From IMG/VR virus record IMGVR_UViG_3300007735_000804, positions 124,001 through 188,000 of that record: DNA of 64,000 nt, one strand, 5' to 3'. Each line of letters starts with the position of its first letter. The first letter of the stretch is position 1. The position numbers and the translations under genes are program-made. Of the stretch, positions 1,627 to 13,750 are shown one piece after another. The notes under the pieces are model-generated. The model saw only the letters and a program-made list of their open reading frames with translations. It was not told the origin of the DNA and made no database searches.

Positions 1627-1685
1627 AGTATGGCATGGATCAGGGGTCAGCACAAGGGGGTGTGTGCCACCTGTTCAACTGGCAC
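1627..1685 (-). promoter_or_regulatory. early promoter cassette
   Basis: TGcCATACT -10; GTGCCACCT-GTTC-AACTGGCAC 1664-1685. Confidence 0.8.
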
Positions 1686-2571
1686 ACTTAAACCGTTGGT
1701 TGTTGAAGTTAGCGTTAGAAAAGACCTCACGATTCACCAGTTTGAACATACCAAACTCATTGGTCATGACATAACCCTCAGCATCAATTCTGTTGCCGTA
1801 GAGGTATGCTGCAGGACCATTGTTGCGGCAGAGGTATAAGCAATCATCCTTGATTGACTTCACCAATGCCCACAAACGCAGCAGGTTAGCATCACAATCA
1901 AAGTCGTCTGGGTTGATCTCTTCCCCAGCACGAATGCAGGCATTGATCTGTTGTTTGATCTTTGCCGCCTCTTTTACACTCACAAACTCACAGAGAGTTG
2001 CAATTTGACGGGCAAAGTCACAGACTTCTTTTACATCAGCAAACGATTCTTGCCCGTGCTGAATGTATGCTTGGGGTTGCACAAATTTCACGGTGTCAGT
2101 ATCATTCCAAACGGAACGATCAGGCATGGCAACAGCATCACGAAGATCGCTCGCAGCATAGTAACAAGTGTGCGGAGCGATGATGATACGTTGCTCTACT
2201 ACTTCAGGGAACTGATAGGTGATAGTGTTGGGGGTGTATTCAGTAGATCCACCAAACCCGATAAAGTCACCTTGATAAATGGTATTTGTAAAAGGTAGGC
2301 AATCAAAACAAGCGTGAAGAATTTCTGCAACCTGTCCCTGATGATTCTGATCGATTTCATCATGGGATTCGTTGATCTTGATTTTAACTTTGTTGAAGAC
2401 ACTTTTGGTGCCTACGAAGAAGTTACCAGTGGCAGGATTGCGACCCCAGACAATAGCGGGAGCACCATCAATCTTTACACTCAAGGTGCCACGGGCAGTA
2501 AACCAATCCAGAACAGAAAGATCACCCGTCAGGATGGTATCTTCGGGGTGTTCGAGGTGTGTGTTTTTCAT
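1675..2571 (-). CDS. DUF6267-like protein with ligase/covalent nucleotidyltransferase-type motifs
   Basis: HLEHPED N-terminus, KIDG (motif I KxDG), YQGD, EGYV, KLV. Confidence 0.65.
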   Translation of the reverse strand: MKNTHLEHPEDTILTGDLSVLDWFTARGTLSVKIDGAPAIVWGRNPATGNFFVGTKSVFNKVKIKINESHDEIDQNHQGQVAEILHACFDCLPFTNTIYQGDFIGFGGSTEYTPNTITYQFPEVVEQRIIIAPHTCYYAASDLRDAVAMPDRSVWNDTDTVKFVQPQAYIQHGQESFADVKEVCDFARQIATLCEFVSVKEAAKIKQQINACIRAGEEINPDDFDCDANLLRLWALVKSIKDDCLYLCRNNGPAAYLYGNRIDAEGYVMTNEFGMFKLVNREVFSNANFNNQRFKCAS

Positions 2572-4039: not shown

Positions 4040-4098
4040 AATGTATCAGGGGAGAGGGGGCAGATCAACCCCCCTTGTGCCACCTTCTCAACTGGCAC
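4040..4098 (-). promoter_or_regulatory. early promoter cassette
   Basis: TGaTACATT -10; GGGGG/CCCCC hairpin; GTGCCACCT-TCTC-AACTGGCAC 4077-4098. Confidence 0.8.
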
Positions 4099-4101
4099 AC
4101 A

Positions 4102-10613: not shown

Positions 10614-11024
10614 TTAAACTGCCAATGCACCAGAGGGAATTAGAACACTTTCCATATAGGAATCGTGCCAGTCACAGGTATCATAGCACAACCAATCTCC
10701 AGATTGAGTGTAGATATAGGCAAACTCTTCACCATTCTGAAGATAGGTTGCAAGATCACTATCAAGACGCGGGGGAGTATTTTCTCCACGTTGAGAGTAA
10801 TACTGGGGACCATAAACTCCCAGCACTTTGCTACCATCAAAGCGATCATCAGTCCAGCAGCAGGACATATCACCACCATCAATCAGTTCTGCAACTTTAT
10901 CACGAGTGTTGTAGTGAGTCTTCAGAATACGACCCAACCATTCGGGATAACCATCCCAATGGTGATACACAGAGAGCACAGAACCATCTTTGAGTTCAAG
11001 ACCGATGCGAGCGCGAGTTGCCAT
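10614..11024 (-). CDS. conserved phage protein (MxTRxRIG...YxHWDGYP family)
   Basis: ORF track 136 aa; own promoter at 11050. Confidence 0.75.
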   Translation of the reverse strand: MATRARIGLELKDGSVLSVYHHWDGYPEWLGRILKTHYNTRDKVAELIDGGDMSCCWTDDRFDGSKVLGVYGPQYYSQRGENTPPRLDSDLATYLQNGEEFAYIYTQSGDWLCYDTCDWHDSYMESVLIPSGALAV

Positions 11025-11047: not shown

Positions 11048-11824
11048 TTAGTATAATACCTTCAGCAGCGGATTCTGGTGGTCTTGTGCCACCTCTTCAA
11101 CTGGCACAGCATTGAGGCGCTGTTGAGCAGTCAAAAAGTATTCTTCCTCACGCTCAATACCGATAAAGTTTCTATTTTCTAATTTAGATGCAATTCCAGT
11201 GGTGCCAGCACCCATACATGGGTCAAGCACCAGATCGCCCTCATTCGAGAATGTTCTAATCAACCAGCGATAAAGATCAACGGGTTTCTGTGTAGGATGG
11301 TGCTTACCTTCACCCTCCGCAGTCTTAAAATAGATAACGCTGCGAGGATACCTCAACCCACTGTCATTCTTAACATGAACTGCCTTTGTTTGCACACCAT
11401 ATGCTTCAGTGTCTCTTACAGCAGTTCCCTTATCATAAGGAGTTCCTTGTGTCATTTGAGGATTATATGTGGGTTGTTTCTTATAAAACACCACAATATC
11501 TTCATGAGCACGAAGAGGTTGCTTTTTGGCATTCAGATAACCTGTTGCTTTTGATTTCTCCCACACCATTGTGTACTTGAAGTCTTTATAATTTGAAGCA
11601 ATCAGAACACTTGTAAATGGTTGTGCTGCTGTTGAAATGATGGGGCAAGTTGGTTTACAAATATAATCCACAAGTTCCCAAAATCGCGGGTAATCAATGA
11701 TTGTGTCCCATTCATTTCTTTTATTCAGAGTTCCATAAGGAAAATCTGTCAATAACAAATCAATGCTCTGGGATGCAAGATTACCCAGAACATCAAACAT
11801 ATCTCTATTGTATAACTGACTCAT
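11048..11824 (-). CDS. N6-adenine/N4-cytosine DNA methyltransferase, beta class
   Basis: Motif IV LLTDFPY, HPTQKP, motif I LDPCMGAGTTG, GIERE; ATGA coupling to the upstream gene. Confidence 0.9.
   Translation of the reverse strand: MSQLYNRDMFDVLGNLASQSIDLLLTDFPYGTLNKRNEWDTIIDYPRFWELVDYICKPTCPIISTAAQPFTSVLIASNYKDFKYTMVWEKSKATGYLNAKKQPLRAHEDIVVFYKKQPTYNPQMTQGTPYDKGTAVRDTEAYGVQTKAVHVKNDSGLRYPRSVIYFKTAEGEGKHHPTQKPVDLYRWLIRTFSNEGDLVLDPCMGAGTTGIASKLENRNFIGIEREEEYFLTAQQRLNAVPVEEVAQDHQNPLLKVLY
11050..11107 (-). promoter_or_regulatory. early promoter cassette
   Basis: TATACT; GTGCCACCT-CTTC-AACTGGCAC 11086-11107. Confidence 0.8.
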
Positions 11825-12399
11825 TGATTCAACCACTCTACAAATTTGTTCACTTCTTCAACATCAAGTTGAAAATCAGCATTATACTGCTCCATGTAAA
11901 TTGCACGTTGGGCATTACGCTTTTTATGCTGATTGATAATGAATACTTTAACTTCTTTACCAGTCATTTTCTTAAAATATGCGAGATAATAATTAAAAGA
12001 ATCTTGTGATACACATTCTTGACCAGCAAGAATTGCATACTCTACACCATCAGGCACATCAGGCGATGCATCCAATTCAATAAAATCTAACACTGCACGT
12101 TTAAGATAGCAAGCATCCAAATAGCATTTGGATTCTACTGCTTTAACCATCACACCATCACGGTAGATATGCTTATCAACCTGCAAATTCTTCAACGAAA
12201 CTCCATCAATCTCTTCTGTTCTCTTATAATCATTCTTCTTTGCTTTTAGACTAATGTTGGTACAAATGCGTTGAATCAAATTTTCAAAAATTACACCAGA
12301 TCCATTTCTTGCTTTGCCACCGCCACCAATTAAATGAAGACGTGGAAGATCTTTTATCTCTTGATTATAAGTTTCAATGATAGTGTCAAGATTAGACAT
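11821..12399 (-). CDS. putative PD-(D/E)xK restriction-type endonuclease
   Basis: G..FE ... QVD ... ESKCYLD pattern; translationally coupled to the MTase. Confidence 0.6.
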   Translation of the reverse strand: MSNLDTIIETYNQEIKDLPRLHLIGGGGKARNGSGVIFENLIQRICTNISLKAKKNDYKRTEEIDGVSLKNLQVDKHIYRDGVMVKAVESKCYLDACYLKRAVLDFIELDASPDVPDGVEYAILAGQECVSQDSFNYYLAYFKKMTGKEVKVFIINQHKKRNAQRAIYMEQYNADFQLDVEEVNKFVEWLNQ

Positions 12400-12422
12400 G
12401 AAATACAGGATTCAATTTGTAA

Positions 12423-12480
12423 ACTATAGGGTAAAATGAGGAAGAACAGGGAATAAAGTGGTCAGTTGTCACACTGTCAC
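12423..12480 (-). promoter_or_regulatory. early promoter cassette driving the nuclease-MTase pair
   Basis: TATAGT; TGGTCAGTT-GTCA-CACTGTCAC 12459-12480. Confidence 0.65.
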
Positions 12481-12915
12481 ACCAAATGCCAAAACTCCAA
12501 TCGGTTTGCCAAAACTGTAATCGTATGTCAGAGCATCGTGGCAAACATAGTGGGGATGATTTACTGACACACCTAACCTCTCACACATTTCAGCATGATT
12601 ATCTTCCATCAATTCAACAGCATAAAGCATATGATCCAAGATGTGTTGTAAATCATGATATTCAAGAAGTTTATCACGCAAAGCAATCATAAAGTTACCA
12701 GAACCTGCCGAGTTATCAAGAAACTTGGCATTTGGATCTTTCAACTTCTCTTCTGGCAAACTATTCACCATCTGACGACAAACTTCAAGAGGTGTGAATA
12801 CTTCTTGAGTAACTTTGATTCGTTCATCAGATCTTTCAACTGAAGACCCAACTTCTTGATTGTGTTTGTTCTTTTTGTTTTTCGTAGAGTTCACAGATTT
12901 CACCTTTTGAGACAT
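12469..12915 (-). CDS. DNA methyltransferase SAM-binding half (motifs X-I-II-III)
   Basis: EVFTP, FLDNSAGSGNF, YAVEL, HDAL; no motif IV. Confidence 0.75.
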   Translation of the reverse strand: MSQKVKSVNSTKNKKNKHNQEVGSSVERSDERIKVTQEVFTPLEVCRQMVNSLPEEKLKDPNAKFLDNSAGSGNFMIALRDKLLEYHDLQHILDHMLYAVELMEDNHAEMCERLGVSVNHPHYVCHDALTYDYSFGKPIGVLAFGVTV

Positions 12916-13486
12916 GATTACGCCCATTTGTATTTGCACTAATTTTAACAAGATCTTCTTCAAGAGATAATAAAGTTTCAATAACCTTTTGGTCTCTTGC
13001 ATTCACAAAATAATGATCCAATTGCTTTGTGACTTTATTGATTGACATCTTTTCTTTCTTCGGCAGATACTTCTCAAAGTTATCTGTGAACATTTTACCA
13101 GCGTTACCAGTGCGAATGATAACTAGGTTGGCACGGTGTCGGTTCTCATAGTTCAAAAACTCAAAATCTGGATGACTTGTTTTCTCTATAATGATTGTTC
13201 TTGGTCTATCACCCAGTTGCCAAGTTTGAATTGATGCGTGAATACCTTGTGGAAATGTTTTCTCATCACAATCAACATCTTTTACGCAGTGAAGATATGA
13301 ATTACCCTTGATGATTTTATTCTGAACCGATGTCTTGCGAATTGAGTTTGGTAGAATTTCAAGAATGATACCATCCTTCTTGATGTGAAAAGATGACTTG
13401 ATGAGAAAATCAGTGGCAAGTTGTCCACAATTACCATAAGGAAAATTGCCAATAATCACATCAAAATCATTCATATCAAAAGTCAC
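12836..13486 (-). CDS. DNA methyltransferase catalytic/TRD half (motif IV onward)
   Basis: FDVIIGNFPY at the N-terminus, ILP, no FxGxG; TTGCAA-17-TATAAT promoter 13498-13526. Confidence 0.7.
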   Translation of the reverse strand: MTFDMNDFDVIIGNFPYGNCGQLATDFLIKSSFHIKKDGIILEILPNSIRKTSVQNKIIKGNSYLHCVKDVDCDEKTFPQGIHASIQTWQLGDRPRTIIIEKTSHPDFEFLNYENRHRANLVIIRTGNAGKMFTDNFEKYLPKKEKMSINKVTKQLDHYFVNARDQKVIETLLSLEEDLVKISANTNGRNHVSKGEICELYEKQKEQTQSRSWVFS

Positions 13487-13537
13487 AAGTTATGGACATT
13501 ATAAAACCCTCTTACATTTTTTGCAAGAGGATAATTA

Positions 13538-13750
13538 TCAATTGTCGTAGATTTTACACTCCGCAGCATCAGGATGTGTATCACAATAAAGTTCAAGCGG
13601 AGTTGGATCATATGAATCTTCCGGATGATGTTCTTTATATACTTTCAGTGCTTCTAGTTCCTCTTCTGTGTGTCTCCGTGCTTGTGGAGAAATTGTTGGG
13701 TCACTCAGAAGATCCTCATCTTTCTGAATGTGCTGGTTGATGTTTTCCAT
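13538..13750 (-). CDS. cp12: CP12 Calvin-cycle inhibitor (cyanophage type)
   Basis: PTPLELYCDTHPDAAECKIYD C-terminal motif. Confidence 0.92.
   Translation of the reverse strand: MENINQHIQKDEDLLSDPTISPQARRHTEEELEALKVYKEHHPEDSYDPTPLELYCDTHPDAAECKIYDN

What the first reader, a model, noticed from the sequence alone, without database searches (positions are those of the whole stretch)
11048..12480. Phage-encoded restriction-modification-like pair under an early promoter
Seen: a 192-aa PD-(D/E)xK-pattern protein (FE...QVD...ESKCYLD) is coupled by an ATGA overlap to a complete beta-class amino-MTase. The pair is bracketed by two palindrome cassettes (11086, 12459) and the nuclease is transcribed first. 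Known: lytic phages usually carry orphan MTases, and complete R-M pairs are uncommon. Inference: a self/non-self weapon that cuts unmethylated host or co-infecting phage DNA, acquired as one cassette.
Basis: partly seen in the sequence, partly recalled or inferred. Interest (0 to 1): 0.6.

Follow-up and report, generated by a model that had tools for sequence, protein, structure and literature searches.

The report
Cyanophage restriction-modification gene pair
A freshwater T4-like cyanophage carries a restriction-enzyme-like nuclease fused by a 4-base overlap to a DNA methylase, and comparative genomics suggests the nuclease cuts CTNAG, a site that phages carrying this gene have largely or wholly purged from their own genomes.

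Summary
The two genes, the ATGA overlap, the PD-ExK motif and the beta-class methylase are real. The 192-aa protein matches no sequence family. Its high-confidence model (pLDDT 95.9) is a Type II restriction-endonuclease fold, nearest BbvCI (Z 13.5) and the Bpu10I family. A symmetric homodimer is supported. E39, D75, E89 and K91 are invariant. The pairing is conserved both ways: 78 of 85 nuclease loci carry this methylase clade directly downstream, and 63 of 71 methylase loci carry the nuclease directly upstream, in varying neighbourhoods.

New result: CTNAG, the core site of the BbvCI/Bpu10I/Bsu36I/BlpI enzymes, is the most depleted palindrome in genomes with the nuclease. Observed/expected is 0.28 here and 0.00-0.01 in S-CAM1, S-CAM3 and AG-345-P14. 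It is 0.68-1.26 in ten isolates without the gene. The median is 0.09 in 76 nuclease loci against 0.85 in 79 control loci.

I read the pair as a Type IIP R-M module, probably CTNAG-specific, used offensively. Activity, methylase specificity and timing are untested. The "early promoter" is not shown. Of the two "bracketing palindromes", one belongs to the next gene's upstream cassette and the other is a tandem repeat.

The parts
11821..12399 (-). 192-aa nuclease gene: a new, virus-restricted PD-(D/E)xK restriction-endonuclease-like family (phrog_10849). Catalytic codons are E39 at 12283-12285, D75 at 12175-12177, E89 at 12133-12135 and K91 at 12127-12129.
   Evidence: AF2 model with pLDDT 95.9. 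Nearest folds are BbvCI (Z 13.5), NucC (11.1), then Bse634I, PspGI, NgoMIV and Cfr10I at 9-10. Atlas: Bpu10I family, TM 0.64. Homodimer ipSAE 0.53 against best control 0.00.
11048..11824 (-). 258-aa beta-class N6/N4 DNA methyltransferase gene. Motif IV DFPY is at 11735-11746 and motif I at about 11198-11230.
   Evidence: Pfam PF01555 E 9e-31. phrog_67. PDB relatives are M1.HpyAVI/DpnA-type, M.MboIIA, CcrM and M.RsrI. It is the only PF01555 gene in the 213-kb genome.
11821..11824 (-). ATGA: the methylase start codon overlaps the nuclease stop codon.
   Evidence: The same 4-nt overlap occurs in L004, L006 and L007. Overlap or near-abutment is typical of 63 loci.
11085..11108 (.). Inverted repeat TGTGCCA-N10-TGGCACA, one of three copies (also at 1663 and 4076). 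It is part of a conserved cassette of about 90 nt upstream of the next gene (10614..11024) and does not belong to the pair.
12467..12481 (-). Tandem direct repeat TGTGACA-G-TGTGACA, 68-82 nt upstream of the nuclease ATG. It overlaps the stop of the upstream ORF. It is unique and its function is unknown.
13498..13532 (-). Hairpin followed by the best sigma-70-like site of the region (TTGCAA-17-TATAAT). This is the candidate start of a four-gene unit.
   Evidence: Not above chance, and no RNA data exist.
12469..13486 (-). Context: two overlapping ORFs (216 aa at 13486..12836; 177 aa at 13002..12469, probable ATG at 12915). They carry methyltransferase motif IV (GNFPYG) and then motifs X-I-II-III (FLDNSAGSGNF). 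This looks like a second, split methylase at the head of the same gene string.
   Evidence: No indels in four metagenome runs.

Best explanation
The two genes form a Type IIP restriction-modification module carried by a freshwater T4-like cyanomyovirus. The 192-aa protein founds a virus-restricted family of homodimeric PD-(D/E)xK endonucleases. Its closest structural relatives are the BbvCI/Bpu10I group. It most likely cuts the palindrome CTNAG, as DdeI does. The downstream beta-class methylase, probably translationally coupled, most likely modifies the same site (m6A, or m4C).

Proposed mechanism. Virion DNA arrives already modified, and CTNAG has also been thinned to about a quarter of expectation in the phage genome. 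The nuclease can therefore be made first. It would cut the unmodified host chromosome, where CTNAG is at expectation, and the DNA of co-infecting phages that lack the system. That would yield nucleotides and exclude rivals.

Shown: gene structure, fold, conserved residues, linkage, and the association with CTNAG depletion. Inferred: nuclease activity, CTNAG specificity, methylase specificity, protection, timing and biological role.
For: Fold. AF2 gives pLDDT 95.9 and pTM 0.91. D75 sits at the head of strand 76-80, E89-x-K91 lies in strand 83-94, and E39 lies in helix 27-48. VIA-align gives BbvCI Z 13.5 (172 of 192 residues, rmsd 3.2), then NucC and a run of Type II enzymes. Foldseek agrees. 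The nearest named atlas cluster is RE_Bpu10I. A symmetric homodimer scores ipSAE 0.53 against a best control of 0.00; that mark was reached by 20 of 30 solved homodimers and 1 of 23 monomers, the runs agree in 100% of contacts, and partner pLDDT is at least 89.

Linkage. Of 85 nuclease loci with room downstream, 78 have this methylase next. Of 71 loci of the methylase clade (67-94% identity), 63 have the nuclease directly upstream. Methylases in related nuclease-free contigs are only 26-48% identical. The pair's neighbours differ between phages.

Specificity. CTNAG is the most depleted of all 4-7-bp palindromes tested in G000: 123 observed against 437 expected. It is nearly absent from S-CAM1 (3 of 450), S-CAM3 (1 of 218) and AG-345-P14 (1 of 124), which carry a 30%-identical homologue. 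GANTC is at expectation throughout. Ten isolates without the gene score 0.68-1.26, including S-PM2 on the same laboratory host as S-CAM1 and five phages from the same sites as S-CAM1 and S-CAM3. The median is 0.09 in 76 nuclease loci against 0.85 in 79 helicase-anchored control loci, Mann-Whitney p 2e-22. BbvCI, Bpu10I, Bsu36I and BlpI all cut C|TNAG-core sites, and M.DdeI protects against BbvCI (PMC6326814).

Methylase effect. Genomes with the cognate methylase clade keep 28-38% of expected sites (G000, G007, G008). Lineages without it keep 0-1%.

Targets. Picocyanobacterial loci carry CTNAG at expectation, about 1-3 per kb.
Against: - No sequence-level match to any restriction-enzyme family: Pfam, NCBIfam and PDB give nothing. 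hhalign against Bpu10I-family proteins gives probability 1.5%, E 0.035.
- The methylase's target is unknown. Its relatives methylate unrelated sites.
- Many paired contigs are almost as purged as solo ones (median 0.09), so what the methylase adds is unclear.
- Some solo-nuclease contigs keep CTNAG without a methylase in view: G002 has 17 of 26 expected, and L038 and L039 are similar. These are fragments covering 3-17% of a genome.
- Bpu10I-family enzymes occur in 36 of 401 sampled cyanobacterial genomes, so host restriction could drive the depletion.
- The genomes compared fall into few independent lineages.
- There is no RNA evidence and no promoter next to the gene.
Confidence: 0.6

Rival explanations
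1. The pair is a true R-M pair, but CTNAG depletion is imposed by DdeI/Bpu10I-type restriction systems of the natural hosts. The phage nuclease then has some other, unknown specificity, and the association with the gene reflects shared ancestry or shared host range.
For: RE_Bpu10I genes occur in 36 of 401 sampled cyanobacterial genomes. Other short palindromes (CCGG, AGCT, GTAC, TGCA) are depleted in nearly all cyanomyoviruses whether or not they carry the gene. Two methylase-only fragments are also partly depleted, at 0.28 and 0.34. Few independent lineages were compared.
Against: S-PM2 and S-SKS1 were isolated on the same host strain (WH7803) as S-CAM1, and they score 0.97 and 0.71 against 0.01. 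Five co-occurring Californian phages score 0.68-1.26. The depleted site is exactly the core of the nuclease's nearest structural relatives. In one search the listed matching genomes measure 3.3-8.5 Mb, and none of the listed 1.6-2.9-Mb genomes matched.
Confidence: 0.15
2. The nuclease is mainly a selfish, free-standing endonuclease of the kind seen in the seg and mob genes of T4-type phages. It spreads by cutting genomes that lack it, and the methylase is an accessory immunity gene.
For: In L009 and L010 the gene sits alone between the gp45 clamp and gp44 clamp-loader genes. It is also alone in L022, L029, L038, L039, L055, S-CAM1 and S-CAM3. Nuclease and methylase identities are discordant between loci, for example 57% against 93%, which points to recombination within the pair. 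Population variants break off at about 10905-10924 and 13513-13585.
Against: Homing enzymes recognise long, rare sites near their own gene and do not drive genome-wide purging of a 5-bp palindrome. The fold and the predicted symmetric dimer are those of orthodox Type IIP enzymes. This view overlaps the accepted picture of R-M systems as selfish elements, so it is only partly a rival.
Confidence: 0.1
3. The nuclease is a methyl-directed nicking or repair enzyme (MutH-like logic), or a signal-activated non-specific nuclease like NucC, that works together with the methylase instead of being blocked by it.
For: NucC is the second-best fold match at Z 11.1. MutH-type enzymes are also PD-(D/E)xK proteins paired functionally with a methylase (general knowledge).
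Against: Neither model predicts selective loss of CTNAG from carrier genomes. The protein is 50 residues shorter than NucC. A dimer is supported, and no trimer was tested. No cyclic-nucleotide synthase is seen beside it.
Confidence: 0.05
4. The adjacency has no functional meaning: an orphan counter-defence methylase happens to lie next to an unrelated small gene.
For: Cyanophage methylases are usually read as orphans (PMC12801897). Methylases 45-51% identical are orphans in hundreds of unrelated phages.
Against: Two-way linkage of 89-92% across varied neighbourhoods. The start and stop codons overlap. The catalytic residues are invariant.
Confidence: 0.05

Closest known systems
BbvCI / Bpu10I / Bsu36I / BlpI restriction endonucleases (Pfam RE_Bpu10I; PDB 6EG7, 6MAF, 6MAG) and, by specificity, DdeI (C^TNAG)
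   Same: Best structural match: Z 13.5 over 172 of 192 residues, and atlas TM 0.64. Canonical D...ExK site. The inferred target CTNAG is the shared core of these enzymes (PMC6326814). The weak profile alignment places ESKxYLD on ECKTNLD.
   Different: No significant sequence similarity. The protein has 192 aa against about 275-310. It is encoded by one gene with a predicted homodimer, whereas BbvCI and Bpu10I are heterodimers. The inferred site is 5 bp, not 7 bp. It is found only in viruses. Its partner is an amino-methylase, whereas M.DdeI is a C5 methylase (my own knowledge).
Chlorovirus R-M systems (for example CviAI/CviAII) and Marseilleviridae GATC R-M systems
   Same: Virus-encoded Type II pairs used offensively: host DNA degradation in chloroviruses, exclusion of rival viruses in marseilleviruses. 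In melbournevirus the nuclease is transcribed before the methylase (PMC7253447).
   Different: Those are eukaryotic viruses with different enzyme families and sites. Here the carrier genomes are additionally purged of the site, completely so in lineages without the cognate methylase.
Eco29kI R-M operon
   Same: The nuclease gene precedes and partly overlaps the methylase gene in one operon (PMC3113576 abstract).
   Different: It is a plasmid-borne bacterial defence system with unrelated proteins.
T4 host-DNA nucleases EndoII (denA) and EndoIV (denB)
   Same: A T4-type phage destroys host DNA while its own DNA is chemically exempt (my own knowledge, not tested here). This is the functional analogy.
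   Different: T4 discriminates by hydroxymethylcytosine and uses a GIY-YIG enzyme and another fold. Here discrimination would be by site methylation and site avoidance.
NucC (CBASS / type III CRISPR effector nuclease)
   Same: Second-best fold match, Z 11.1.
   Different: NucC is a cA3-activated trimer or hexamer with no sequence specificity. Nothing here suggests nucleotide signalling.

Membership tests
Type II restriction-modification system | Endonuclease with a restriction-enzyme catalytic fold and an intact active site | tested here: met
   The model has a PD-(D/E)xK core. E39, D75, E89 and K91 are invariant. This is a prediction, not an assay.
Type II restriction-modification system | Separate DNA methyltransferase gene adjacent to the nuclease and co-inherited with it | tested here: met
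   4-nt overlap. Linkage is 78 of 85 and 63 of 71.
Type II restriction-modification system | Nuclease and methylase recognise the same sequence, and methylation blocks cleavage | not testable with these tools
   Only indirect evidence: genomes with the methylase clade keep 28-38% of expected CTNAG, and lineages without it keep 0-1%.
Type II restriction-modification system | Sequence-specific double-strand cleavage | not testable with these tools
   Inferred from CTNAG depletion that tracks the gene.
Type IIP (homodimer, palindromic site) | Symmetric homodimer | tested here: met
   ipSAE 0.53 against a best control of 0.00, with an identical interface on both copies. This is model support only.
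RE_Bpu10I (PF09549) / BbvCI family | Significant match to the family profile | tested here: not met
   No Pfam hit at E up to 0.1. hhalign against 10 cyanobacterial members gives probability 1.5%, E 0.035.
RE_Bpu10I (PF09549) / BbvCI family | Same fold with the catalytic motif in the equivalent place | tested here: met
   Z 13.5 and TM 0.64. The ExK strands are aligned by hhalign.
Beta-class N6/N4 amino-methyltransferase (PF01555) | Profile match over the gathering score, with motif order IV (DPPY-like), then TRD, then I (FxGxG) | tested here: met
   108 bits against a cut-off of 26.7. DFPY is at residues 27-30 and VLDPCMGAGTTG near residue 200.
Free-standing homing endonuclease | Long, rare target next to its own insertion site | not tested
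   Only context is available: the gene is solo between gp45 and gp44 in L009 and L010.
NucC-like signal-activated nuclease | Association with a cyclic-oligonucleotide synthase, and trimeric assembly | tested here: not met
   No such neighbour appears in the six fully listed loci. A dimer is supported. A trimer was not tested.

The most novel reading that the evidence does not exclude
A widespread, virus-only family of small restriction enzymes lets cyanomyoviruses shred any CTNAG-bearing DNA, whether host chromosome or rival phage. Self-immunity would come mainly from purging the 5-bp site from a 200-kb genome (3 sites left in S-CAM1, which has no beta-class methylase). The methylase would be an optional add-on that lets a lineage keep about a third of its sites. 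That would be restriction without modification, used as an inter-phage weapon that shapes phage genome composition. A parallel may exist in contig G002, which carries MvaI/BcnI-like nuclease genes and has only 2 of 42 expected GATC sites.
Probability: 0.35. Interest if true: 0.8.

Novelty: new member of a known kind. Interest (0 to 1): 0.62.

Why it matters
Cyanophage methylases are routinely annotated as orphan counter-defence genes, and this nuclease family is annotated only as hypothetical.

If the reading holds, several things follow:
- Many abundant aquatic cyanomyoviruses carry an offensive restriction system.
- The system would account for host-DNA breakdown without T4-style base substitution.
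- It would provide a mechanism for exclusion between co-infecting cyanophages.
- It would explain a strong oligonucleotide signature, CTNAG loss, that could serve as a genomic marker of the system.
- It would add a compact 192-aa enzyme family to the CTNAG-core group.

The prediction is directly testable, because S-CAM1 and S-CAM3 are cultured isolates.

Tried and rejected
Searches that found nothing:
- Sequence searches of the nuclease against Pfam, NCBIfam and PDB, as a single sequence and as a profile.
- The scan of 185,579 prokaryote genomes, which found no relative of the nuclease. It only reaches fairly close relatives.
- The feature search of the ESM Atlas, which gave only a weak MunI lead (0.89, 126 shared features). 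I did not pursue it.
- hhalign against Bpu10I-family proteins, which was not significant.

Ideas rejected:
- GANTC as the target, suggested by the CcrM- and HinfI-like hits. GANTC is at expectation in every genome.
- The flanks of the 123 CTNAG sites that remain in G000 give no sign of a longer recognition site.

Limits:
- I looked for the methylase elsewhere in solo-nuclease contigs, but these are fragments covering 2-17% of a genome, so the blank says nothing.
- No RNA runs hold the sequence, so transcription timing could not be examined. Laid contigs showed only that the sequence and the split upstream methylase recur without indels.
- The psbA-anchored host search returned mostly distant cyanobacteria. 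I used only five picocyanobacterial loci and the pooled set.
- The search for homologous proteins sees only proteins of 0.55-1.75 times the query length, so fusions of the nuclease would have been missed.

Failed or corrected calls: 51 (regions and files given together), 54 (script timeout), 62 (pattern too short), 70 (script error), 97 (wrong handle type).

Not used: the large representative-protein search, and any alternative genetic code.
Full report
WHAT IS THERE

The window is bases 124001-188000 of a complete 213,274-bp IMG/VR virus record. The record carries psbA, and its nearest DNA relatives are Kyanoviridae cyanomyoviruses. Near-identical sequence turns up in riverine, lake, freshwater and sediment metagenomes from ten studies, so this is a freshwater T4-like cyanophage.

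On the minus strand, ORF 12399..11821 (192 aa) ends in TGA. That stop overlaps the ATG of ORF 11824..11048 (258 aa) as ATGA. The second ORF is a full-length N6_N4_Mtase (Pfam E 9e-31). Motif IV (DFPY) lies near its N-terminus and motif I near its C-terminus, which is the beta-class order. It is the only PF01555 gene in the genome.

THE NUCLEASE

The 192-aa protein has no Pfam, NCBIfam or PDB sequence match. It belongs to PHROG 10849, which has no assigned function. It has more than 220 metagenomic homologues of the same length.
- E39, D75, E89 and K91 are invariant in 33 diverse homologues. They are also invariant in the 30%-identical proteins of the isolates S-CAM1 and S-CAM3 and of the single-virus genome AG-345-P14.
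- An AlphaFold2 model from that alignment is very confident: pLDDT 95.9, pTM 0.91. Its topology is the classical restriction-enzyme core. E39 lies in the first long helix, D75 at the head of one strand, and E89-x-K91 in the next strand.
- An exhaustive structural comparison puts BbvCI first, at Z 13.5 with 172 residues aligned at rmsd 3.2. NucC follows at 11.1, then Bse634I, PspGI, NgoMIV, Cfr10I, BsaWI, PfoI, SgrAI, EcoRII-C and AgeI at 9-10. Foldseek agrees.
- Among ESM Atlas clusters the nearest named one is the Bpu10I family, TM 0.64.
- A symmetric homodimer is supported. The score is ipSAE 0.53 against a best control of 0.00. That mark was reached by 20 of 30 solved homodimers and 1 of 23 monomers. 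The three runs agree in 100% of contacts, and partner pLDDT is at least 89.
- A profile-profile comparison with ten cyanobacterial Bpu10I-family proteins is not significant (probability 1.5%). It does align ESKxYLD with ECKTNLD.

I therefore call this a restriction-endonuclease fold nearest the BbvCI group. I do not call it a member of that Pfam family. No relative was found in 185,579 prokaryote genomes, and the atlas clusters are viral.

LINKAGE

Among loci fetched through the nuclease, 78 of 85 with room downstream carry the methylase immediately after it. This holds in different neighbourhoods: after a UvsW-like helicase, after DUF7717, or before DUF6267.

Among loci fetched through the methylase (67-94% identity), 63 of 71 have the nuclease directly upstream. 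The two sets share contigs, so they are not independent.

In 79 related contigs anchored on the neighbouring helicase, none has the nuclease. The methylases they carry are only 26-48% identical to this one. This methylase clade is therefore specific to the pair.

Identities of the two genes are discordant between loci, for example 57% for the nuclease and 93% for the methylase. That suggests recombination within the module.

Exceptions exist. The nuclease stands alone between the gp45 and gp44 genes in L009 and L010. It is also alone in L022, L029, L038, L039 and L055 and in S-CAM1 and S-CAM3. S-CAM1 has no PF01555 gene anywhere in its 198 kb.

A SPECIFICITY LEAD

I scored every 4- to 7-bp palindrome, with N, W or S centres allowed, against a maximal-order Markov expectation.

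CTNAG is the most depleted palindrome in this phage, with 123 observed against 437 expected. It is almost absent from the three genomes carrying the distant homologue. GANTC is at expectation everywhere.

CTNAG observed/expected by genome:
- With the nuclease and the cognate methylase: this phage (G000) 0.28, G007 0.38, G008 0.28.
- With the distant nuclease homologue: S-CAM1 3 of 450, S-CAM3 1 of 218, AG-345-P14 1 of 124.
- Without the gene: S-PM2 0.97, Syn9 1.10, P-SSM2 0.88, P-HM1 1.03, S-SKS1 0.71, S-CAM4 0.99, S-CAM9 0.98, S-CAM22 1.14, S-WAM1 1.26, S-CAM7 0.68.

S-PM2 and S-SKS1 were isolated on the same strain (WH7803) as S-CAM1. The S-CAM phages come from the same Californian sites. 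CCGG, AGCT, GTAC and TGCA are depleted in nearly all of these phages regardless of the gene, so they behave as host-driven signals.

At contig level, 76 nuclease-bearing loci have a median of 0.09. The 79 helicase-anchored controls have a median of 0.85 (Mann-Whitney p 2e-22).

CTNAG is exactly the shared core of BbvCI (CC|TCAGC), Bpu10I (CC|TNAGC), Bsu36I (CC|TNAGG) and BlpI (GC|TNAGC). M.DdeI methylation protects against BbvCI (PMC6326814). Two independent lines, fold kinship and genome signature, therefore point to a DdeI-like CTNAG specificity.

Candidate hosts are not depleted. Five picocyanobacterial loci carry about 1-3 sites per kb at expectation, and 1.38 Mb of cyanobacterial sequence scores 0.94.

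ROLE OF THE METHYLASE

Genomes with the cognate methylase clade keep about a third of expected CTNAG sites. The S-CAM1, S-CAM3 and AG-345-P14 lineage, which lacks it, keeps 0-1%. This fits a methylase that protects CTNAG and relaxes the purge.

The methylase's target is nonetheless unknown. Its solved relatives methylate GAGG-type, GAAGA, GANTC or GAATTC sites. Beta-class m6A enzymes predicted for CTSAG/CTNAG exist in giant viruses (PMC12700378). m4C CTNAG methylases exist in Helicobacter and in archaea.

Three observations weaken the argument:
- Many paired contigs are nearly as purged as solo ones.
- Two methylase-only fragments are partly depleted, at 0.28 and 0.34.
- Some solo fragments keep sites (G002, 17 of 26 expected). 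These are small pieces of genomes.

TRANSCRIPTION AND THE "CASSETTES"

No sigma-70-like site lies just upstream of the nuclease gene. The best one in the region (TTGCAA-17-TATAAT, beside a hairpin at 13532..13498) precedes two further ORFs. Hits in the region are not above chance.

Those two ORFs carry methyltransferase motif IV and then motifs X-I-II-III in separate, overlapping frames. Four metagenome runs show no indel there, so the split is real.

The inverted repeat at 11085-11108 is one of three copies of a conserved cassette. Each copy sits about 60 nt before the next gene's ATG. The element at 12467-12481 is a tandem direct repeat.

Population variants break away at about 10905-10924 and about 13513-13585. 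These breakpoints flank the whole four-gene block and not the pair alone. No RNA run holds the sequence, so "early" cannot be judged.

MECHANISM PROPOSED

The nuclease is a homodimeric Type IIP enzyme that cuts unmodified CTNAG. The phage is exempt through methylation by the coupled methylase and through site thinning. Its targets are the host chromosome and co-infecting phages that lack the system; such phages carry 2-3 CTNAG sites per kb.

The closest functional precedents are the chlorovirus R-M systems, which degrade host DNA, and the marseillevirus R-M systems, which exclude rival viruses and transcribe the nuclease before the methylase (PMC7253447). Eco29kI shows the same order, with the nuclease gene before and overlapping the methylase gene.

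The literature held here treats cyanophage methylases as orphan counter-defence genes (PMC12801897). It contains nothing on this family or on CTNAG avoidance in cyanophages.

VERDICT

The promoter and bracket claims are not. As a kind, this is a new member of a known class (Type II R-M) carried by a lytic cyanophage. The added points of interest are a testable specificity and a possible self-immunity by site purging.

Noticed in passing
window 12469-13486 (minus strand): A second methyltransferase appears split into two overlapping ORFs. A 216-aa part carries motif IV (GNFPYG). A 177-aa part carries motifs X-I-II-III (FLDNSAGSGNF) and has a probable ATG at 12915. Each half matches its own PHROG (5172 and 4376). 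S-SKS1 has the same two ORFs. No indels were seen in four runs.
   Followed up: partly
window 1663-1686, 4076-4099, 11085-11108: A conserved cassette occurs three times: TGTGCCAGTTGAAnAGGTGGCACA, then about 30 nt, then a TATACT-like -10, then AGACGCC..ATG. These are its only copies in the 213-kb genome. Each precedes a minus-strand gene. A variant contig's loose end at 13545 carries a similar TGTGCCAGTTTGAGAAC. It may be a regulatory or recombination unit.
   Followed up: partly
L038 3185-3766 and 6577-7158 (contig G002, 12 kb): Two paralogous 193-aa genes hit the MvaI_BcnI restriction-endonuclease family just under threshold (22-23 bits against 25). The contig has only 2 GATC sites against 42 expected. 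This may be a second case of a phage nuclease with a purged target.
   Followed up: partly
L007 2268-4275: One relative carries a further N6_N4 methylase, a 353-aa ORF with no family match and a 72-aa DpnI_C-domain ORF. These lie just upstream of the DUF7717 gene and the nuclease-methylase pair.
   Followed up: no
G000 whole genome; Within CTNAG, the W-centred sites are more depleted than the S-centred ones in this phage: CTWAG 33 of 214 against CTSAG 90 of 223. S-CAM1 has lost both. The remaining sites are commonest at 30-90 kb and 120-130 kb.
   Followed up: no
cyanomyovirus isolates: CCGG is completely or almost absent from most cyanomyoviruses examined (0 sites in S-CAM1, S-CAM3, S-PM2, P-SSM2, P-HM1, S-CAM22 and S-WAM1) but normal in S-CAM4 and S-SKS1. 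AGCT, GTAC, TGCA and CATG are also widely depleted.
   Followed up: no
window 10905-10924 and 13513-13585: Contigs from several metagenomes diverge from the window at these points. They flank the block made of the split methylase, the nuclease, the methylase and the start of the next gene. Variant positions within the methylase gene fall on third codon positions.
   Followed up: no
L008 4561-5357: In one long-read-polished contig the cognate methylase is split into 155-aa and 110-aa ORFs. This could be a frameshift, a pseudogene or an assembly error.
   Followed up: no
401 sampled cyanobacterial genomes: RE_Bpu10I-family genes occur in 36 of the 401 genomes. The listed matching genomes measure 3.3-8.5 Mb. 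Several genomes have two partial hits within a single frame of about 337 aa.
   Followed up: no
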